This document shows, piece by piece, positions 23,370 to 29,797 of a DNA stretch of 64,000 nucleotides. The position numbers and the translations under genes are program-made. The stretch lies in the IMG/VR virus record IMGVR_UViG_3300036770_007547, positions 1 to 64,000 of that record; one strand, given 5' to 3'. How positions within the stretch are numbered: the first letter of the stretch is position 1; each line of letters opens with the position of its first letter. The notes under the pieces are model-generated. The model saw nothing but the letters and a program-made list of their open reading frames with translations. It did not search any database and was not told the DNA's origin.

Positions 23370-24161
23370 ATGCAATTTGCCTTTGATCTAATTTCAGACC
23401 TACATGTGGACAGCTGGCGCCAGAGCCTGGACTGGGAACACCAAGCCACGAGTCCTGTGTGCATTATAGCAGGAAATGTCACGGGAGATCAAGCCGAGCT
23501 ACACCGTACACTCACCGACATATCCAAATGCTACAAAGCCACTATCTACATCGACGGCGAAGGCGAGCACATCAACGATTGCAGCGACATCGGCCGCAAC
23601 TATCACGACATAGATCGGTTGTGCCAATCCATAAACAATCTCGTGTATCTACAGGACAACTGTGTGATCATGAACGGGGTGGCGGTGATCGGAACCAATG
23701 GTTGGTGGACCTGGGACTTTGATCCCGACATCGATGTCGATCAAGCTCAGGCCTGGTTTTGTCATACCACGCATCATCACACCAACGTCACTGAAGTGAT
23801 ATCCAATCTGGCCAACAGCGAGGCCAAGTATCTCTCCAGCTCGGTGTTGAAACTGCAAAGACATCCCGAGGTGCGCAAGATCGTGGTGGTCACGAATTGT
23901 GTGCCCTATCATTGCTTGATCGAACACGACCAAGACCTACGATCGAAATATGATGTGGGAGTGATCGGCAACAAATGGATGCGGCAGGTGATTGGCAACG
24001 ATCTCGAGAGCAAGATCAGTCATTGGTGCGTGGGACGATATCCTGGCATGTTTGACAAGGTCATCGATGGTGTGAGATTTGTCAGCAACCCCCGAGGACA
24101 TGCACAAGCATCGTGGAACCAAACAGTTTATTTTCCACGACGCTTTGAGATTGATATCTAG
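23370..24161 (+). CDS. metallophosphoesterase-like protein with degenerate motifs
   Basis: SDLH retained; AGN for GD; DGEGEH for GNHE; SNPRG. Confidence 0.75.
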   Translation: MQFAFDLISDLHVDSWRQSLDWEHQATSPVCIIAGNVTGDQAELHRTLTDISKCYKATIYIDGEGEHINDCSDIGRNYHDIDRLCQSINNLVYLQDNCVIMNGVAVIGTNGWWTWDFDPDIDVDQAQAWFCHTTHHHTNVTEVISNLANSEAKYLSSSVLKLQRHPEVRKIVVVTNCVPYHCLIEHDQDLRSKYDVGVIGNKWMRQVIGNDLESKISHWCVGRYPGMFDKVIDGVRFVSNPRGHAQASWNQTVYFPRRFEIDI

Positions 24162-24472
24162 ACTTCTTCGGGCTCGAGTTTGATTTGCAAGGGATGGCCT
24201 TGGTTCCGAGCAGCATGAGTGATCTCGATGCCTTTTTGTTCGGCCACTTCGTAGGGCAACACTGCCACCACTGCTGAACCAGACTGATGTATGTCATGCG
24301 TGATCTGGGTGGCTGTGTCCAAGGTATATTCGAAATGCTCGATAAGGCTTTCGATTACAAATTCTATCGTGGTCTGATTGTCATTCATGTAGATGACCTT
24401 GAACATCGACGGCTCTTTGACGCCAAGCACAGCACGGGTTTTGATTTTTGTATTCGCGTCCAATTGTGACAT
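24158..24472 (-). CDS. clpS: Clp protease adaptor ClpS
   Basis: KVIYMNDNQTTIEFV, IHQSGSAVV, EVAEQK, HPLQ. Confidence 0.93.
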   Translation of the reverse strand: MSQLDANTKIKTRAVLGVKEPSMFKVIYMNDNQTTIEFVIESLIEHFEYTLDTATQITHDIHQSGSAVVAVLPYEVAEQKGIEITHAARNQGHPLQIKLEPEEV

Positions 24473-24513
24473 ATGGATTCCTCAGAAGTGGGCCCGAGTG
24501 GGCCCACTGTTAT

Positions 24514-24963
24514 TTAAGCCTTGTTGTTTTCGGATTGATACGCGATGGAGATCTTGCGTGGTTTCATCGCTTCGGGTACCACTCGTTCCAGCTTGATCCT
24601 CAAAATACCTTCCTGCATTTCCGCCGATTGCACTTCTACATAATCGGCAAGAGTGAACGTGCGGGTGAAGCTGCGACTGGAAATACCATGATGCAGATAC
24701 TCCACGTTTTCTTCCACACCAGCACCGTTGCCTTGGATGGTGAGGCGTCCTTCATGGAATTCTACCTCGATGTCGCCTTGACGGAATCCGGCTGCGGCCA
24801 CTCGGATCTCATAGCTGTCATCCCCGGTCTTGACGATGTCATAGGGAGGGTAGTTGTTGCCGGCAGCAGAATCGATCTGATTGGTGATGCGATCAAACAA
24901 TCGATCCACACCGATGGTGTTGCGATAAAACGGGGAAAGGTCAAACGCTGTGATTTTAGTCAT
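24514..24963 (-). CDS. small heat-shock protein Hsp20 (IbpA-like)
   Basis: YPPYDI, AAAGF, YLHHGIS.RSF.R.F.LA, GILRI. Confidence 0.95.
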   Translation of the reverse strand: MTKITAFDLSPFYRNTIGVDRLFDRITNQIDSAAGNNYPPYDIVKTGDDSYEIRVAAAGFRQGDIEVEFHEGRLTIQGNGAGVEENVEYLHHGISSRSFTRTFTLADYVEVQSAEMQEGILRIKLERVVPEAMKPRKISIAYQSENNKA

Positions 24964-25035
24964 GATGTCTTCTCCTTTGTTAAGCAAGTTGACTAATGTG
25001 TAGCCCGACTATCGGCACTACAATGTTATTTATAC
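24964..25035 (-). promoter_or_regulatory. late promoter plus ROSE-like leader of hsp20
   Basis: TATAAATA; hairpin TGTAG...CTACA; CTTGCTTAACAAAGGAGA. Confidence 0.65.
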
Positions 25036-25053
25036 AGCAGATATCGCGAACTG

Positions 25054-25272
25054 TCAAGATTTTCCGGCATTCCTGACTCGGTAATCACAACCAGCCCAGG
25101 TCATAAAAAACAAAGTGAAATGCTCGGGGTAGTTCAGTCCCAGACGGTATTTCAATCCGCGGGCCACTTTGGTGGTAAAAGGCACATGATGTATCCGGGC
25201 CCATTCGCGGACCTGATATTCCAACGTGTCAAAATCGACATCCACATCAAGGATGTCAAACTCAATGTACAC
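25054..25272 (-). CDS. hypothetical protein
   Basis: 72-aa ORF between rpsU and hsp20. Confidence 0.65.
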   Translation of the reverse strand: MYIEFDILDVDVDFDTLEYQVREWARIHHVPFTTKVARGLKYRLGLNYPEHFTLFFMTWAGCDYRVRNAGKS

Positions 25273-25273
25273 T

Positions 25274-25495
25274 CTAGTACATTCTTGGGGGCAGTTGCTG
25301 ACCTTTGATGTAACGCTCCCAGCGTTTTTTGGCCAGGCTTTTGGCGGTCTTGCGACGTGTGGTGGGTTTGACGTAGGTCTCTCGCTCGCGTAGATCCATG
25401 AGCAGACCCGAATTCTGTATCTTCTTCTTGAACTTGCGCAGAGCCTTTTCGACGTTGCCGTCGGTGACTATAACACTTCTTCCATGTAGAGCCAT
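25274..25495 (-). CDS. rpsU: ribosomal protein bS21
   Basis: NVEKALRKFKKK...RERETYVKPT. Confidence 0.92.
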   Translation of the reverse strand: MALHGRSVIVTDGNVEKALRKFKKKIQNSGLLMDLRERETYVKPTTRRKTAKSLAKKRWERYIKGQQLPPRMY

Positions 25496-25505
25496 GATTC
25501 TCCTT

Positions 25506-26702
25506 TTACAATGATGATGGGGTATTTACCAACTCGGTGTCGATATCTACACACTTTATTCCTCGATCGTGATAGTCGCGCAGATGATACATGTGCGGCA
25601 TCAACACTCGCTCGAGCTCGCTGTGCAAGGCACGAGCTCCGGTGCCCGAACCACGAGATCGATCCACCAAGGCTTCCAGCGCCGGCCTTGACAAGTTGAG
25701 ATCCACCCCATCTTGCTGGAAGATCCAACGATACTGATCCACTAGATTGTTGCGCACGTCAGTGAGTATGCGCATCATGTCTTCGCGATCCAAGAGATCG
25801 AGATTTATCACTGTGGGAAATCTTCCCACGAACTCGGGTATCATGCCAAACTTGACCAGGTCGTCGGGTGTCACTGCACTGAGAGACACCGACTTTTTCT
25901 CGGGCAAAGGATTCTGGAATCCCATGCTTGAGCCAATCAATCGACGTTGTATGATGCTTTCCAGCCCCACGAAGGCTCCACCGGCTATGAACAGTATGTT
26001 GGTGGTGTCGATCTCTAGATTCTCTCCGTTGGGATGTTTGCGTCCGGGCTGTGTGGGAACTCGGCATTCGGTGCCCTCTACCAGTTTCAGCAAGGCCTGT
26101 TGCACGCCTTCGCCACTCACGTCTCGGGTGATCGAAGAGCTTTCGCTTTTTCGAGCGATCTTGTCGATCTCGTCCACGAACACGATTCCTCGTTCGGCAC
26201 GTTCGATGTTGTAGTCAGCAGCCGCATACAATCTACTGATCAGACTTTCCACGTCATCGCCCACATATCCGGCTTCGGTGATGGAAGTGGCATCGGCGAT
26301 CACAAAAGGCACATCCAGATACCGAGCCACAGTGCGTGCCAACAGAGTTTTTCCCGAGCCCGTGGGACCCAGCATGAGTATGTTGGCTTTTTGTATTTCC
26401 GGCGATGACTTGTCGCGATTGATACGCTTGTAGTGATTGATCACGCTCACGGCCAACACTATCTTGGCACTGTCTTGACCGATCACATAGTCGTCCAAGA
26501 ACGTCTTGAGCTGTCTGGGATCATGGTTTCTTTGTTCAACCGAATCGTGTGCTTCGGAAGCTTCGGGGTCGGTCAGTAGTTCCTGGCACAATGACACACA
26601 TTCATTGCAGATGGCCGAATTTTCACTGACTATGAGTTTTTGTACTGCGTCCTTGTGCTTGCCGCAGAATGCACAAGAATCAAGTGCTTGCTGTTCTTTC
26701 AC
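25506..26702 (-). CDS. clpX: Clp protease ATPase subunit ClpX
   Basis: C4 zinc domain, GPTGSGKT, DEIDK, RDVSGEGVQQ, RKH, MGF loop, TGARAL. Confidence 0.97.
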   Translation of the reverse strand: MKEQQALDSCAFCGKHKDAVQKLIVSENSAICNECVSLCQELLTDPEASEAHDSVEQRNHDPRQLKTFLDDYVIGQDSAKIVLAVSVINHYKRINRDKSSPEIQKANILMLGPTGSGKTLLARTVARYLDVPFVIADATSITEAGYVGDDVESLISRLYAAADYNIERAERGIVFVDEIDKIARKSESSSITRDVSGEGVQQALLKLVEGTECRVPTQPGRKHPNGENLEIDTTNILFIAGGAFVGLESIIQRRLIGSSMGFQNPLPEKKSVSLSAVTPDDLVKFGMIPEFVGRFPTVINLDLLDREDMMRILTDVRNNLVDQYRWIFQQDGVDLNLSRPALEALVDRSRGSGTGARALHSELERVLMPHMYHLRDYHDRGIKCVDIDTELVNTPSSL

Positions 26703-28327
26703 TGATTCTCCTGATCAAGCCTTTTTTCTATCTGTTGACGTTCGGCATCGGTGAGCAATTCGGGGTCGTATTCACCGGTACTGATCTTGTTGATGAGATG
26801 TTCGATGTAGGCATTGTTGTAACTATAGCTGTCTGTTTGTGATTTGTCAACTTCGATCCATTTCGTACCGTTGAATTTGTAGAGCAAACTCGGCATCTGA
26901 TCGATGCGCACATACATGTCGCCCTTGACGGGGGTTTCGGGCCAAGCTGGACCAAATCCAACATCGCGACGTATGCGTGGATCGTCGAGATATTCCATCC
27001 AGCCTGGCTCGGGTATGCGACCCATGATCACCAGGCGTCGTTGCTCTTTGAGAGTTTTTCCGGGATTGTCGTTTTTCCAAAGATGTTGTGCTTGCTTGAT
27101 CACTGGATCTTCGCTGACCGGATCTTCTTCGGCGATGAAATCAGGCACTGGCGCCAACTCTTGTTGTAGCTGTGCCATGTGTTCGTCGCTCAACGATGCA
27201 GCCTCCGTGGACTCGGTGGGTTTGCTCCAATCGATGTCGGGATTCTGATAAAAGTATTTGCCATTTTCAGGCATCGCTGTGTGTGCTGGTTGTTTTGGCA
27301 CATAAGGTTCGGGTTCTTCGTCCGACACGTCATCCAGCACTTGATAGTCCACTAGACGTGGGGCCACATCTTCTCGAGATTGGTCTCGGGTATCTTGATC
27401 GACCACGGGTGTAGCGTCCAATTCATGAGATCCTTGGTCATCATGTACGGCATCCACATCCAAATCTTTGTCAACACTGGTATCATTAGCGGGTGCATCT
27501 GGAGTCTCCGGTTCGGTAACGATGGCTGCTTTTCTTTCCCGGTGCCATTTCAGGCTTTCGGTGGCGGCCAGCAACATCATGATGGCCAGTGGATCAAACA
27601 CTGCCACCAATAATACAATCATCCATCTCACTGCACGTTCCAGGAGATTCTCATCGGGATTGTCGCCGTAAAGCAAAGCGGCCACATAACGTATGGGACC
27701 GACTTCGGCCTCGATCTTTCTCAGATCTCGTGCCATGGGCGCTTTCTCTTCCTGGAGTTTTACTATGCGAGCCTGTGCGGCTTCGATGGTGCGAGTGAGA
27801 TTGTCTCGGTCTCGGGCCTGGCTGCGGCGCACAGCAAGAGCACGCTCAGCCGAACTTTGGGTATAGGTGCTTCCATCTCGACGAGTTATCTCTCGATCAT
27901 TGCCGGCCGATTGGATTCCGATCACTGCGTCATCCAATTGCTTGATCAGCGATCGTGCGTTTTCGATGGTGTCTCGCTCGTTTTTTATTTTCTCATCTAT
28001 CAGCGCGACCTGTGCGGCCACATCACCGGTGGGCACAGCTTGATCTAGGTGTGCTTTTGACAAAAATCCAAAAATTCCCATGCTGGTGATCAGCATGAGT
28101 GCTGCCACTGCGGGCACCAAATACAACTTCATGGCCAACTTGCACTGGCCCCAATGTTCGTGCAGCCAAACCGTGACCACCAGTTTGGCAGCTTCCAGCA
28201 CACCACCCATGATGATGATGGGCAACACCGAGGCCGAAAATATAGCCGTCAAGCCCACTATGCTGTAAAATGCGGCGATGACGCTCAAGGCCAGCGCCAC
28301 CAAGAACATGAGTGCAGTCAGGATCAT
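26699..28327 (-). CDS. membrane protein with long coiled coil and acidic linker
   Basis: Three N-terminal TMs, coiled coil, fourth TM; TAAATA 5 nt before ATG. Confidence 0.8.
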   Translation of the reverse strand: MILTALMFLVALALSVIAAFYSIVGLTAIFSASVLPIIIMGGVLEAAKLVVTVWLHEHWGQCKLAMKLYLVPAVAALMLITSMGIFGFLSKAHLDQAVPTGDVAAQVALIDEKIKNERDTIENARSLIKQLDDAVIGIQSAGNDREITRRDGSTYTQSSAERALAVRRSQARDRDNLTRTIEAAQARIVKLQEEKAPMARDLRKIEAEVGPIRYVAALLYGDNPDENLLERAVRWMIVLLVAVFDPLAIMMLLAATESLKWHRERKAAIVTEPETPDAPANDTSVDKDLDVDAVHDDQGSHELDATPVVDQDTRDQSREDVAPRLVDYQVLDDVSDEEPEPYVPKQPAHTAMPENGKYFYQNPDIDWSKPTESTEAASLSDEHMAQLQQELAPVPDFIAEEDPVSEDPVIKQAQHLWKNDNPGKTLKEQRRLVIMGRIPEPGWMEYLDDPRIRRDVGFGPAWPETPVKGDMYVRIDQMPSLLYKFNGTKWIEVDKSQTDSYSYNNAYIEHLINKISTGEYDPELLTDAERQQIEKRLDQENQ

Positions 28328-28331
28328 AAGA

Positions 28332-28613
28332 TTATTTATCGCTTCTTGGGTGGTTATCACTGCTTACAATAACCGCTAGCTTGGTGGCCACCCAAGTGGC
28401 CCAGCGCTCATCGGGCACGTCGAACCATACCGGTATCACCCCATGATTGTGAACGAGTTTGCGGCGCACTCGGGGCTGTGTGTGCCACTGGCTGCCGAAC
28501 CAATCCCGGCACTCGCGCATCACAGCATACCACTGTTCGATGGTATGTACCCACACATAGAATCGGTGCAGATCCGGGGTCGTTTTTTTAAGTGAGCTAG
28601 ATTCCATCGACAT
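28332..28613 (-). CDS. Trp-rich hypothetical protein
   Basis: ORF directly downstream of the structured RNA; start uncertain. Confidence 0.65.
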   Translation of the reverse strand: MSMESSSLKKTTPDLHRFYVWVHTIEQWYAVMRECRDWFGSQWHTQPRVRRKLVHNHGVIPVWFDVPDERWATWVATKLAVIVSSDNHPRSDK

Positions 28614-28635
28614 GACAATCAGAGATCTCTGTAAC

Positions 28636-28850
28636 AAGCACCATAAGGCTTTTCACCGTGGGCCACTCATTGGCTTACCCCCCAAGGAGTGGTGCTTTCC
28701 AGGCACATCACTTGAGTTTTGTACCTACCTCGATCGGGCCCTTGGTAGGTACTGAGCGGTGTCACACCCGCGATAGGAATTAAGTGGCTGAGCCATGGAC
28801 CAAGGCGCCTTTGTCCGCCAACCCCTATCTATCGTGCCCCATCACTGCCA
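28636..28850 (-). ncRNA. candidate multi-stem structured RNA, family unknown
   Basis: No long ORF; seven or more helices; G-U pairs work only on minus strand; TTGATC-N17-TAACAT promoter at 28855-28883. Confidence 0.7.
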
Positions 28851-28982
28851 GTAGATGTTACTAGATATCTCGTGATTGATCAAGACGGTCTGGCCAAACG
28901 ATCAGGTAGATATTTCTTTGATTGGATCTGTTTCCACATGCGTTTCAATCGCCATACCAAATAATGCAACCACTCGCGACGG

Positions 28983-29120
28983 TCAATCATTGTGTTCTCC
29001 TTTTTCAGATATGATTCCAAGGAATGCCATCATCAATCCCAGTCCCAACCACACCGGGTCCCGGTCCAGGAATGACACTATACAAAACATCAGAGATGAT
29101 GTATACAAAAGTCCGCTCAT
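28983..29120 (-). CDS. small two-TM protein
   Basis: Start trimmed to MSGLLY; ATGA coupling. Confidence 0.5.
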   Translation of the reverse strand: MSGLLYTSSLMFCIVSFLDRDPVWLGLGLMMAFLGIISEKGEHND

Positions 29121-29797
29121 GTGTTTGGAACTCCCAGATGTTTTTTTACCAATTGCGATATCACACCATGTCCCTGGATGCTGGGATGCCAGTTGTCTTG
29201 ATCGGTCACGAGATTGTTGGATCGGCAATACTCCATCATGCCGCCGTGACCTTCGAGGTCCACTCTCCGGTGTGCTCGTGTGTTCATGAAGTCCTGGAAC
29301 CAGGGCGACAGATTACGGGCAGTGTGCTCCAACATGTACATGAAATGATAATCAAATCCACGAAGTTCTAGATAGCTGATCATTCCCATCAAAGCCAGTT
29401 CATTGGTCCACTCTGCGGGCGGTATGCCCATGCGTTTGAGATGTTTGACTGGCCTGCATCCGTGTGTGCGCCAGTTCACCCCCAACACCGAAGACCAAGG
29501 AAAATTGGCACTGCCAGTGACGTCGTCGGCCTCGCACATCACATCCACTCGAGCCATGTCACTGATGTTGAACAATACCCGGGTATGTTCGGGACGAAAA
29601 TGTGGTTGCCGTTGCAGAAACATCATGACATTGTTGGCAACGGCGAAATTGCCACCGCCTGACAGGCCCAAATTGGCGTACATGTCAATGCCATCCAGCA
29701 AAAAATGCGACCAAACCTGGGGATCACGTCGAGCGGTATCTAGATCACTGCTACCAGCAGTGAAACTGCAACCAGCCACCAACAATGTGTTTATCAA
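29117..29797 (-). CDS. SGNH/GDSL-like protein
   Basis: AGCSFT, NLGLSGGGN, DNWHP. Confidence 0.7.
   Translation of the reverse strand: MINTLLVAGCSFTAGSSDLDTARRDPQVWSHFLLDGIDMYANLGLSGGGNFAVANNVMMFLQRQPHFRPEHTRVLFNISDMARVDVMCEADDVTGSANFPWSSVLGVNWRTHGCRPVKHLKRMGIPPAEWTNELALMGMISYLELRGFDYHFMYMLEHTARNLSPWFQDFMNTRAHRRVDLEGHGGMMEYCRSNNLVTDQDNWHPSIQGHGVISQLVKKHLGVPNT

What the first reader, a model, noticed from the sequence alone, without database searches (positions are those of the whole stretch)
28636..28883. Promoter-driven ~210-nt multi-helix RNA of unknown family
Seen: a long stretch without a convincing ORF in a gene-dense genome, directly downstream of a minus-strand promoter TTGATC-N17-TAACAT (28855-28883). 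The minus strand folds into: a closing stem AUGGGGC/GCCUUAU (28836-42 with 28643-49); a 10-bp stem GAUAGGGGUU/AAUUCCUAUC enclosing two hairpins; a GCGG/CCGC hairpin; a perfect 9-bp GUACCUACC/GGUAGGUAC stem; GUGC/GCAC; and CACUC..UUGG/CCAA..GAGUG. G-U pairs make sense only on the minus strand. Loop GGGCC can pair with downstream GGCCC as a pseudoknot. I do not recognise tmRNA, RNase P, SRP, 6S or common riboswitch cores. Inference: a new phage ncRNA, ribozyme or cis-regulator of the 28332 gene, upstream of the clpX-rpsU-hsp20-clpS block.
Basis: partly seen in the sequence, partly recalled or inferred. Interest (0 to 1): 0.8.

Follow-up and report, generated by a model that had tools for sequence, protein, structure and literature searches.

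The report
New pseudoknotted phage leader RNA family
The flagged stretch is a real, roughly 200-nucleotide folded RNA that sits between a promoter and a conserved gene in a clade of large uncultured phages; it matches no catalogued RNA family and most likely controls expression of the operon behind it.

Summary
The 266-nt gap at 28614-28879 (minus strand) is real and non-coding. Folding energy alone is unremarkable (z = -0.59) and Rfam 15 gives no hit. Comparison decides the case. More than 50 distinct relatives from viral and metagenome contigs carry a homologous element at the same place: behind a sigma-70-type promoter and directly before the same small gene, which is followed by a membrane-protein gene and clpX. 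On 49 aligned sequences, 90% of cells pair (33-43% when partners are slid) and 30 of 41 pairs show compensatory changes. A covariance model built without the window finds it once, at 28650-28840 (E about 0.002). The comparative fold has two domains (P2-P3-P4/5 and Pa-Pb-P6-P7) tied by a pseudoknot (T1). In the window's subgroup, a kissing interaction joins the P6 loop to a downstream bulge. The closing stem, the GCGG hairpin and the CACUC/GAGUG hairpin are not conserved. The best reading is a new cis-acting leader RNA (an orphan riboswitch-like or protein-binding element). Its effector is unknown, and no RNA run holding the region was listed, so transcript evidence could not be examined.

The parts
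28878..28883 (-). -35-like hexamer TTGATC; it overlaps the stop codon of the upstream 36-aa ORF
   Evidence: Sequence. It occupies the position of TTGACA in relatives, with a 17-nt spacer in 43 of 49 members.
28855..28860 (-). -10-like hexamer TAACAT. The predicted start of transcription is about 28848, which is an inference.
   Evidence: Sequence. It lies 14 nt before the model start, the same distance as TAAAAT in most of the window's subgroup.
28830..28848 (-). 5' segment GGCAGUGAUGGGGCACGAUA, holding the family-invariant G-C-A-x-G (28833-28837). Its partner is unresolved.
Evidence: Invariant columns 4-8 of alignment A5.
28772..28829 (-). Domain 1. P2 is GAUAGGGGUU (28820-29) with AAUUCCUAUC (28772-81). 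P3 is GGC (28817-19) with GCC (28786-88). The P4/5 hairpin is GGAC...GUCC (28797-28816). An internal loop AUGGCUCA (28789-96) lies on the 3' side.
   Evidence: Helix table and coordinates. P2, P3 and P5 covary in the family. The same order of elements is seen in L078, L081, L213 and the close relatives.
28791..28794 (-). T1 pseudoknot, 5' strand GGCU, pairing with AGCC at 28672-28675
   Evidence: GGCA/UGCC in 35 members changes to GGCU/AGCC in L078, L081, L213 and the window, and to AGCA/UGCU in L002 and L004.
28761..28769 (-). Junction GGGUGUGAC. The family consensus is GG-N-UG-N-G, invariant in all 49 members.
28753..28761 (-). 5' strands of the long-range helices Pa (CACCG, 28757-61) and Pb (CUCA, 28753-56)
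   Evidence: Pa is CACUG/CAGUG in most members and CACCG/CGGUG here. Pb is seen as CCUC/GAGG, CCUU/AAGG, CCCU/AGGG, CCAA/UUGG, CUUC/GAAG, UCCU/AGGA, CUUA/UAAG, and CUCA/UGAG here.
28721..28752 (-). P6 hairpin, a 9-bp stem GUACCUACC/GGUAGGUAC. Its 14-nt loop carries the kissing strand GGGCC (28737-28741).
   Evidence: Relatives have 8-10-bp stems of unrelated sequence at this place, and the main family has a short GNRA-capped hairpin.
28716..28721 (-). Conserved single-stranded CAAAAC between P6 and P7
   Evidence: Near-invariant columns 222-226 of A5.
28682..28715 (-). P7. The outer stem is UCAAG/CUUGG (28711-15 with 28682-86) and the inner stem is GUGC/GCAC (28703-06 with 28692-95). The loop is CUGGAAA.
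   Evidence: The outer pairs covary across the family.
28654..28681 (-). 3' strand region. It holds conserved GGGGUAAGCC with T1 strand AGCC (28672-75), Pb' UGAG (28666-69), a bulge with kissing strand GGCCC (28660-64), and Pa' CGGUG (28654-58).
   Evidence: The kissing pairs covary: GGCUG/CAGCC, GGCCGC/GCGGCC, GCCGC/GCGGC and GGGCC/GGCCC. The cognate duplex is -11.5 kcal/mol, against -5.0 to -8.5 for the window loop with foreign bulges.
28636..28651 (-). Small local hairpin AAGC-CUUAUGGU-GCUU after the core
   Evidence: Its counterparts GCUG/CAGC, GCCGA/UCGGU and GCUGA/UCGGC occupy the same place in close relatives.
28621..28630 (-). 10-nt palindrome AGAGAUCUCU. GAGAUCUCU is conserved in the whole subgroup, and its GGAG is the probable ribosome-binding purines in relatives.
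   Evidence: Its reading frame relative to the start codon differs between members, so the constraint is not on protein sequence.
28332..28613 (-). Downstream gene of 93 aa (start MSMESSSLKK). It is followed by a 542-aa membrane protein (26699-28327), clpX (25506-26702), rpsU, hsp20 and clpS on the same strand.
   Evidence: The AlphaFold model has a ferredoxin-like fold, pLDDT 84, and no informative PDB match.

Best explanation
The element is the 5' leader of the mRNA for a conserved phage operon: the 93-aa gene, a 542-aa membrane protein, clpX, and probably rpsU, hsp20 and clpS.

Proposed course of events. Host RNA polymerase starts at a sigma-70-type promoter (28855-28883). The first roughly 195 nt fold into a compact two-domain RNA. 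Domain 1 is P2-P3-P4/5. Domain 2 is P6 and P7, enclosed by the long-range helices Pa and Pb. The domains are tied by the T1 pseudoknot, which pairs an internal loop of domain 1 with the conserved GUAAGCC motif of domain 2. In the window's subgroup a kissing interaction also joins the P6 loop to the bulge between Pb' and Pa'. The last strand of this fold (Pa') lies just upstream of the translation start region. I propose that formation or stabilisation of the pseudoknotted core sets how accessible the start region of the first gene is, and that a still unknown effector drives it. The effector could be a small molecule, or a protein such as the 93-aa product itself.

Shown here: the conserved position, the promoter, the helices with their covariation, homology to the family, and absence from Rfam.

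Inferred: transcription itself, action in cis, control at the level of translation, and the existence of an effector.
For: Homology and structure:
- A covariance model built from 35 main-family sequences, without the window or its subgroup, finds one hit in the 64-kb window, at 28650-28840(-): 18.2 bits, E = 0.0017. It finds nearly all subgroup members at E from 7e-8 to 0.03, and L164 is missed.
- On the 49-sequence alignment, 90.3% of cells pair against 33-43% when partners are slid. Thirty of 41 pairs carry changes on both sides. The covariation score is 0.388 against at most 0.098, and 0 of 500 shuffles reach it. The result is the same on the plain MAFFT alignment of 35 sequences.
- G-U pairs such as U-G in 34 of 35 sequences at one P4 pair fit only this strand.

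Support for action in cis:
- All copies sit in the same orientation directly upstream of the same gene, across proteins only 34-60% identical.
- In the main family Pa' ends 1-3 nt before the Shine-Dalgarno AAGGA.
- No terminator-like site lies between the RNA and the gene.
- Homologous genes that lack the RNA have only a promoter and a short leader (L147, L156), so the RNA is an add-on to expression and not part of the gene.
- The promoter is conserved at a fixed distance, with 30 of 49 members perfect at 12 of 12 positions.

Other observations:
- Invariant junction nucleotides (GG-N-UG-N-G, AAA-N-C, GG-N-GU-NN-GC) are typical of a binding pocket or tertiary core.
- The main family has a GNRA tetraloop where the window's subgroup has a kissing loop at the same site. 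Such swaps are typical of RNAs selected for a three-dimensional fold.
Against: - No RNA sequencing run holding the region was listed, so the transcript, its ends and any processing are unobserved.
- I found no conserved alternative pairing that sequesters the ribosome-binding site. The candidates were P2' with the Shine-Dalgarno sequence, the 5' GGAGGU with downstream ACCUCU, and the 5' segment with the AUG region. Each holds in some subgroups only.
- The distance from Pa' to the start codon is 12-15 nt in the main family but 40-60 nt in the window's subgroup, and the window has no good Shine-Dalgarno sequence. A single translational mechanism for the whole family is therefore not evident.
- The minimum-free-energy fold differs from the comparative fold, and stability is not above shuffles.
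- The nested helices in A5 were aligned by a model that contains them, which favours them., T1 and the kissing loop are free of this bias.
Confidence: 0.5

Rival explanations
1. It is a stable non-coding RNA that acts in trans, for example as a decoy or sponge for a host or phage protein or as a scaffold. It would be made from the strong early promoter and either released from the mRNA by processing or simply co-transcribed with the gene.
For: The fold is large and ornate, with tertiary contacts, which is more than most translational operators need. No conserved platform sequestering the ribosome-binding site was found. The geometry from core to start codon varies between subgroups. The promoters are perfect consensus, which suits an abundant RNA. 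A small covarying hairpin follows the core in the window's subgroup and could mark a 3' end or a processing site.
Against: Every one of the more than 50 copies is tied to the same downstream gene in the same orientation. No intrinsic terminator follows the core. The post-core hairpins have 4-5 bp and no U-tract. The window holds only one copy.
Confidence: 0.2
2. It is a cis-acting processive antitermination RNA, working like HK022 put or Bacillus EAR. The nascent leader would bind the RNA polymerase that made it, so that it reads through terminators or Rho sites along the long co-directional gene block.
For: The element lies next to the promoter, at the head of a long same-strand block: the 93-aa gene, the membrane protein, clpX, rpsU, hsp20 and clpS. 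Its function would not depend on distance to the start codon, which fits the variable spacing. This rests on my knowledge of put and EAR, not on a test.
Against: The only terminator-like site downstream (28077-28099) lies inside the membrane-protein gene and follows from the conserved codons MLITSM. It is not conserved as a hairpin in relatives. put RNAs are about 70 nt with two stem-loops and no pseudoknots, so they are much simpler. No Rfam antitermination family matched.
Confidence: 0.12
3. It is a self-cleaving or otherwise catalytic RNA, in the way glmS controls its mRNA, which processes the leader.
For: The size, the double-pseudoknot topology and the invariant junction nucleotides are compatible with a ribozyme core. 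Like glmS, it lies in a 5' UTR.
Against: No match to any ribozyme family in Rfam 15, even at E up to 10. The GAUGAG that resembles a hammerhead core in one subgroup is not conserved: it reads GUUGCG or GGUGUG elsewhere. There is no positive evidence of cleavage.
Confidence: 0.08
4. It is not an RNA feature. The conservation would reflect a short protein-coding gene or DNA-level sites such as operators, for example the palindromes.
For: Some frames are free of stops over 40-67 codons in individual members, mostly on the opposite strand. The main family has an invariant AUG 3-5 nt after the predicted start of transcription, with a 16-17-codon ORF. GAGAUCUC is a perfect palindrome in the window's subgroup.
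Against: Subgroups differ by many 1-, 2-, 4- and 5-nt indels, so no frame is kept. The short ORF is lost in the window and its close relatives, where CACG replaces CAUG. Compensatory double changes and G-U pairs specific to one strand are not expected for coding sequence or double-stranded DNA sites.
Confidence: 0.04

Closest known systems
Cobalamin (B12) riboswitch
   Same: It is a leader of about 200 nt with a multi-helix core. A loop-loop kissing interaction involves sequence next to the translation start region, and peripheral elements vary between subclasses. This comparison rests on my own knowledge.
   Different: No match to the Rfam cobalamin model, even at E up to 10. There is no B12 box. 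The helix order and junction sequences differ, and the downstream genes have no link to B12.
Pseudoknot riboswitches that act on the ribosome-binding site (SAM-II, preQ1-II)
   Same: The 3' strand of a pseudoknot helix lies directly upstream of, or at, the Shine-Dalgarno sequence. In the main family Pa' ends 1-3 nt before AAGGA.
   Different: Those are 50-80-nt H-type pseudoknots. This RNA is about 195 nt, with two domains and 8-9 helices. The Shine-Dalgarno sequence itself is not inside the helix. No Rfam hit.
Autoregulatory phage leaders such as the T4 gene 32 pseudoknot
   Same: It is a structured, pseudoknotted 5' leader of a phage gene, which could be bound by the product of the gene it precedes.
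   Different: [quoted passage not shown] Here the RNA is far larger, and the 93-aa product has a generic ferredoxin-like fold of unknown function.
Candidate structured RNAs predicted from IMG/VR (PMC10690425)
   Same: The data source and the type of object are the same: covarying intergenic motifs in uncultured phages, many of them upstream of genes.
   Different: Those 8,495 candidates are 29-151 nt long. Their alignments are not held as text here, so I could not check whether a fragment of this family is among them. None is in Rfam 15 under a model that matches.
HK022 put and Bacillus EAR antitermination RNAs
   Same: They are promoter-proximal structured RNAs at the head of a long operon.
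   Different: No sequence or model match, a much more complex fold here, and no conserved terminator found downstream.

Membership tests
Any Rfam 15 family (4227 models) | Score at or above the family's gathering threshold | tested here: not met
   0 hits in the whole window. 0 hits in 12 related loci. In 28300-29200 at E up to 10 there were only two chance snoRNA matches outside the element. No tRNA or tmRNA.
The new leader-RNA family defined here (main family, L078/L081/L213, and the window's subgroup) | Significant match to a covariance model built without the candidate | tested here: met
   Model R1 gives window 28650-28840(-) at 18.2 bits and E = 0.0017 in 126 kb, the only hit in the window.
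The new leader-RNA family defined here | Same genomic position: behind a sigma-70-type promoter and directly upstream of the homologous small gene | tested here: met
The new leader-RNA family defined here | Shared helices P2, P3, P4/5, Pa, Pb, P6, P7 and the T1 pseudoknot, with the invariant junctions | tested here: met
   Every helix can be drawn in the window with Watson-Crick or G-U pairs. The invariant GG-N-UG-N-G, AAA-N-C and GG-N-GU-NN-GC are present. Covariation is shown.
Riboswitch (general class) | Conserved structured aptamer in the 5' untranslated region of the regulated gene | tested here: met
Riboswitch (general class) | Direct, specific binding of a small-molecule ligand | not testable with these tools
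   This needs in-line probing, ITC or reporter assays. The downstream genes, of unknown function plus clpX, give no hint of a ligand.
Riboswitch (general class) | Expression platform with mutually exclusive pairings that involve a terminator or the ribosome-binding site | tested here: inconclusive
   No terminator. Candidate alternative pairings with the start region exist in individual subgroups but none is conserved family-wide.
Cobalamin riboswitch | B12 box and a match to the Rfam cobalamin model | tested here: not met
Self-cleaving ribozymes (glmS, hammerhead, twister, pistol, hatchet) | Match to the family model or a conserved catalytic core | tested here: not met
   The hammerhead-like GAUGAG is not conserved. 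Cleavage itself was not testable.
Processive antitermination RNAs (put, EAR) | Conserved terminators downstream that are read through in the presence of the RNA | tested here: inconclusive
   Only one terminator-like site was found, and it is explained by conserved codons and not kept as a hairpin in relatives. The activity is not testable here.

The most novel reading that the evidence does not exclude
The RNA is the aptamer of a new riboswitch class, or a new protein- or ribosome-recruiting leader. It would let a clade of large phages sense the state of the host and switch on an operon that rebuilds host proteostasis and translation (ClpX, ClpS, Hsp20, ribosomal protein S21). Its fold would be a new double-pseudoknot architecture in which a GNRA-type tertiary contact and a kissing loop are interchangeable.
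Probability: 0.25. Interest if true: 0.85.

Novelty: new variant of a known kind. Interest (0 to 1): 0.68.

Why it matters
Large, well-covarying orphan RNAs are rare, and they have repeatedly turned out to be riboswitches, ribozymes or RNA machines. This one is about 195 nt. It has 8-9 helices, at least two pseudoknots, and a natural swap between a tetraloop contact and a kissing loop. More than 50 distinct natural variants are already in hand, so it is a ready target for structure determination and ligand screening. It heads an operon through which uncultured jumbo phages bring their own ClpX, ClpS, Hsp20 and ribosomal protein S21. Its effector could therefore reveal what signal these phages read when they take over host protein quality control and translation. 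Because the promoters are sigma-70 consensus, the whole unit should be testable in E. coli reporters without the unknown host.

Tried and rejected
- Thermodynamic significance. The z-score is -0.59 on the RNA strand and -0.67 on the other strand, so it is uninformative.
- Direct DNA similarity. blastn against GenBank phages found nothing. blastn and nhmmer of the window element against the first relatives also found nothing, and an HMM of the main family misses the window. Only the covariance model and closer relatives bridged the gap.
- A closing helix P1 (5' GCAU with AUGC). It is invariant in the main family. It is broken by the U-to-A change in L078, L081, L213 and the window, a change that is compensated in the T1 loop instead. 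P1 and T1 share a strand. I prefer T1, but P1 is not excluded in the main family.
- Palindromic hexamers in the P5 loop (ACCGGU, CCCGGG, CUCGAG, CCUAGG) as dimerisation sites. The 10-nt palindromes are simply hairpins with 4-nt loops, and the hexamers remain unexplained. I made no claim from them.
- A short upstream ORF starting at the invariant AUG of the main family. It is not conserved in the window's subgroup or in L081.
- CsrA-type GGA motifs, a hammerhead core, and resemblance to the ZTP riboswitch (GGGUCGUGAC-like). The motifs are not conserved, or there is no Rfam support.
- A terminator at 28077-28099 as a target for antitermination. It is a by-product of conserved codons.
- Function of the neighbouring proteins. 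Pfam, PHROGs and PADLOC gave nothing for the 93-aa protein. The membrane protein gave only a weak DUF4407 match. The protein-atlas search and the structure search gave only a generic ferredoxin-like fold.
- Transcript evidence. No RNA run was listed. The DNA runs only showed near-identical relatives with a few changes.
- Bacterial and archaeal genomes. Forty pattern matches gave one marginal model hit, L185 at E = 0.0014 over 118 nt, which I regard as unconvincing.
- A MAFFT alignment of the subgroup's 3' domain (A7) does not put the kissing strands in common columns. The kissing loop was therefore tested with a hand-parsed table and duplex energies instead.
Full report
THE REGION

On the minus strand a 36-aa ORF ends at 28880. 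The next credible start is the ATG at 28613 (MSMESSSLKK..., 93 aa). The 266 nt between them hold only 26-47-codon ORFs in assorted frames. It scores 8 of 12 against the sigma-70 consensus, so the simple scanner, which requires 9 of 12, did not list it. Rfam 15 gives no hit in the 64-kb window at gathering thresholds, and nothing relevant at E up to 10 in 28300-29200. ARAGORN finds no tRNA or tmRNA. The other strand behaves alike.

RELATIVES

The window is part of IMG/VR contig UViG_3300036770_007547, which is 222,775 bp long. GenBank phages contain no similar DNA and no homolog of the 93-aa protein. Searching IMG/VR with the 93-aa protein gave 20 loci at 34-49% identity. In each of them a stretch of about 200 nt upstream of the gene is strongly conserved at the nucleotide level. 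It begins right after a perfect TTGACA-17-TATAAT.

A motif scan followed by an HMM screen raised this main family to 35 distinct sequences, plus two divergent ones, L078 and L081. A later scan added L213. None matches Rfam.

Closer relatives of the window's protein (49-60% identity) came from the large protein collection. Their contigs and one metagenome pattern scan gave 12 further distinct leaders. These make up the window's subgroup: L146, L149, L150, L152, L153, L163, L166, L142, L161, L155, L164 and L167. Two lineages of the gene (L147/L148 and L156/L157) have only a promoter and a short leader, with no such RNA.

STRUCTURE OF THE MAIN FAMILY

On a plain MAFFT alignment of the 35 sequences (A4) I read the following elements:
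- P2, P3, P4 and P5, a nested stack.
- A conserved 3' internal loop, GUGGCA.
- A junction, GUAGG-N-UG-N-GAC.
- Two long-range helices, Pa and Pb, which enclose a GNRA-capped hairpin P6, single-stranded CAAAAC and hairpin P7.
- The motif GGAGUAUGCC.
- The 3' strands Pb' and Pa', separated by an A-rich bulge.
- Directly after these, the Shine-Dalgarno AAGGA and the AUG.

The loop GGCA pairs with UGCC of the motif; this is T1, a pseudoknot across P2 and P3.

Counting these 44 pairs gives 90.1% of cells paired, against 32-41% when partners are slid by 1-3 columns. Twenty-one pairs have changes on both sides. The covariation score is 0.302 against at most 0.103, and 0 of 500 shuffles reach it. One P4 pair is U-G in 34 of 35 sequences, and there are many other G-U pairs, so the RNA strand is the strand of the gene.

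HOMOLOGY OF THE WINDOW ELEMENT

A covariance model (R1) was built from A4 with the nested helices only. It was searched over the window, the subgroup loci and the RNA-less loci, 126 kb in all. The results were:
- L078 and L081: E = 1e-14 and 1e-12.
- All subgroup members except L164: 7e-8 to 0.01 in this search, and up to 0.03 in the larger search.
- The window: a single hit at 28650-28840(-), 18.2 bits, E = 0.0017.
- The RNA-less loci: nothing.

E-values from this model are rough, as the tool states. The hit is nevertheless unique, full-length and in the expected place.

On the model-guided alignment of 49 sequences (A5), with T1 added, the structure gives 90.3% paired cells, against 33-43% when slid. 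Thirty of 41 pairs have double changes. The covariation score is 0.388 against at most 0.098, and 0 of 500 shuffles reach it. The nested helices are favoured by the way A5 was made. T1 was not in the model and is 94% paired.

THE FOLD IN THE WINDOW

- P2: GAUAGGGGUU (28820-29) with AAUUCCUAUC (28772-81).
- P3: GGC (28817-19) with GCC (28786-88).
- P4/5: GGAC/GUCC (28813-16 with 28797-800).
- Internal loop: AUGGCUCA. Its GGCU (28791-94) pairs with AGCC (28672-75) to form T1.
- Junction: GGGUGUGAC (28761-69).
- Pa: CACCG (28757-61) with CGGUG (28654-58).
- Pb: CUCA (28753-56) with UGAG (28666-69).
- P6: the perfect 9-bp stem (28744-52 with 28721-29).
- CAAAAC: 28716-21.
- P7: outer stem UCAAG/CUUGG, inner stem GUGC/GCAC.

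Compensatory changes support these assignments:
- Pa is CACUG/CAGUG in most members and CACCG/CGGUG here.
- Pb appears in at least eight complementary versions.
- T1 is GGCA/UGCC in 35 members, AGCA/UGCU in L002 and L004, and GGCU/AGCC in L078, L081, L213 and the window.
- A rival 4-bp helix, P1 (5' GCAU with AUGC), shares a strand with T1. It has an uncompensated A-A or A-G mismatch in those lineages, so I prefer T1 without excluding P1 in the main family.

THE KISSING LOOP

In the window's subgroup P6 is long (8-10 bp) and has a 10-14-nt loop. The bulge between Pb' and Pa' is G/C-rich instead of A-rich. Loop and bulge are complementary in every member, and the pairs change together: GGCUG/CAGCC in eight members, GGCCGC/GCGGCC in L155, GCCGC/GCGGC in L164 and L167, and GGGCC/GGCCC in the window (28737-41 with 28660-64).

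RNAduplex energies average -10.1 kcal/mol for cognate loop-bulge pairs, against -6.7 for pairs of different types. The window's own pair gives -11.5, against -5.0 to -8.5 for its loop with foreign bulges. Only 2% of shuffled loops do as well.

Near-identical DNA relatives in two other metagenomes differ at 28738, where a C-to-U change in the RNA turns a C-G kissing pair into U-G. They also carry one inserted base in the loop and three changes in the promoter spacer and -35 region. They have no change in the parts of P2-P6 that their contigs cover.

- The closing stem AUGGGGC/GCCUUAU has no counterpart in any relative. The 3' strand belongs to a small local hairpin that covaries (GCUG/CAGC, GCCGA/UCGGU, GCUGA/UCGGC; AAGC/GCUU in the window).
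- The hairpin UGGC-UCA-GCCA is absent from L078, L081 and L213, which share the same loop GGCU(C)A.
- GCGG/CCGC and CACUC...GAGUG use nucleotides that the family commits to Pa, Pb, T1 and outer P7.
- The comparative nested model evaluates to -46 kcal/mol (-74 when further pairs are allowed), against -86 for the unconstrained MFE of the 252-nt leader. The true fold is therefore not the MFE fold.

CODING AND DNA-LEVEL ALTERNATIVES

Subgroups differ by many indels of 1, 2, 4 or 5 nt, so no frame is preserved. Stop-free runs of 40-67 codons occur in single members, mostly on the opposite strand, and their translations diverge after a few residues. The main family has an invariant AUG 3-5 nt from the predicted transcription start, with a 16-17-codon ORF. 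That AUG is CACG in the window and most of its subgroup, and AUU in L081.

CONTEXT AND FUNCTION

Downstream on the same strand lie, in order:
- the 93-aa gene;
- a 542-aa membrane protein that starts 8 nt after it;
- clpX, which overlaps the stop of the membrane protein gene;
- rpsU (S21), a 72-aa ORF, hsp20 and clpS.

Relatives have the same order through clpX.

The 93-aa protein has no Pfam, PHROG or PADLOC match. A confident AlphaFold model (pLDDT 84) shows a ferredoxin-like beta-alpha-beta-beta-alpha-beta fold, with no PDB match better than E = 0.17. The N-terminal half of the membrane protein occurs in jumbo phages of several hosts and in Pelagibacter phage Mosig, where it is annotated hypothetical.

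No terminator-like site separates the RNA from the gene. In the main family Pa' ends 1-3 nt before the Shine-Dalgarno sequence. In the window's subgroup a hairpin and the conserved GAGAUCUCU come first. GAGAUCUCU is an 8-10-nt palindrome whose GGAG is probably the ribosome-binding purines. Its frame relative to the AUG varies, so it is not conserved as protein. I found no alternative pairing with the start region that holds across subgroups.

VERDICT

This is a genuine, conserved, pseudoknotted leader RNA of a family that Rfam 15 does not contain. A 2023 survey predicted 8,495 short (29-151 nt) candidate RNAs from IMG/VR (PMC10690425). Its alignments are not available here, so overlap with a fragment of this family cannot be excluded.

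The most likely role is control, in cis, of the operon it heads, with an unknown effector (confidence 0.5). The rivals are a trans-acting stable RNA (0.2), a put/EAR-like antiterminator (0.12), a ribozyme (0.08), and a non-RNA explanation (0.04). No RNA run holding the region was listed, so transcription and the ends of the RNA remain inferred.

Noticed in passing
window 28883-28990 (-): A 36-aa ORF (MIDRREWLHYLVWRLKRMWKQ...) with a good ribosome-binding site ends inside the -35 hexamer of the leader's promoter. A similar small ORF (MLHRKEWLHYIKWRIKKFF...) lies upstream of the leader in L167, so it is probably a real, conserved micro-gene.
   Followed up: partly
window 28621-28630 (-); L141, L142, L146, L149, L152, L155, L164, L167: GAGAUCUC(U) is a perfect 8-10-nt palindrome conserved in every member of the window's subgroup, 10-25 nt before the start codon. 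It is homologous to GAGACCUCU / GGGAUCUCU inside the first codons of the main-family gene. Its reading frame differs between members. Its role is open: ribosome-binding purines, a protein site, or RNA dimerisation.
   Followed up: partly
L005-L016 and the other main-family loci, first 10 nt of the RNA: GCAUG is invariant in all 35 main-family members. The AUG lies 3-5 nt from the predicted transcription start and opens a 16-17-codon ORF that ends at a UAA in the P5 loop. It is lost in the window's subgroup (CACG) and in L081.
   Followed up: partly
L147/L148 (gene at 1501-1758) and L156/L157 (gene at 701-973): Homologs of the 93-aa gene in contigs of 242 kb and 335 kb have only a consensus promoter and a leader of about 30 nt, with no structured RNA. 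The RNA is therefore an optional addition to the gene.
   Followed up: yes
Main-family loci, P5 loop (A4 columns 46-64): The P5 terminal loop carries 6-nt palindromes that differ between subgroups (ACCGGU, CCCGGG, CUCGAG, CCUAGG, often together with AGAUCU or AUCGAU). This is unexplained. Loop-loop dimerisation or a protein site is possible.
   Followed up: no
L146, L149, L150, L152, L142, L161 (P7 loop and 15 nt before GAGAUCUCU): The motif GUUGAUA(G/U) occurs twice in the same sense, once as the P7 loop and once just before the palindrome. It is not present in the window.
   Followed up: no
window 24161-26702 (-): Phage-encoded ClpX (zinc finger plus AAA+ domain), ribosomal protein S21, Hsp20 and ClpS lie in one same-strand block behind the leader's operon.
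   Followed up: yes
window 29120-29797 (-) and 28986-29120 (-): The 226-aa protein upstream has no Pfam, PHROG or PADLOC match, and no relative in IMG/VR by peptide patterns other than its own contig. A 45-aa hydrophobic ORF lies between it and the micro-gene.
   Followed up: partly
L185:593-710 (-) (Fermentibacteraceae MAG contig): This was the only model hit among 40 pattern matches in bacterial and archaeal genomes (19.7 bits, E = 0.0014, 118 nt for a 182-position model). It is probably spurious and I did not inspect it.
   Followed up: no
window 28077-28099 (-): A terminator-like hairpin followed by AAUUUUUGG lies inside the membrane-protein gene. It arises from the conserved codons MLITSMGIFGF and is not kept as a hairpin in relatives.
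   Followed up: yes
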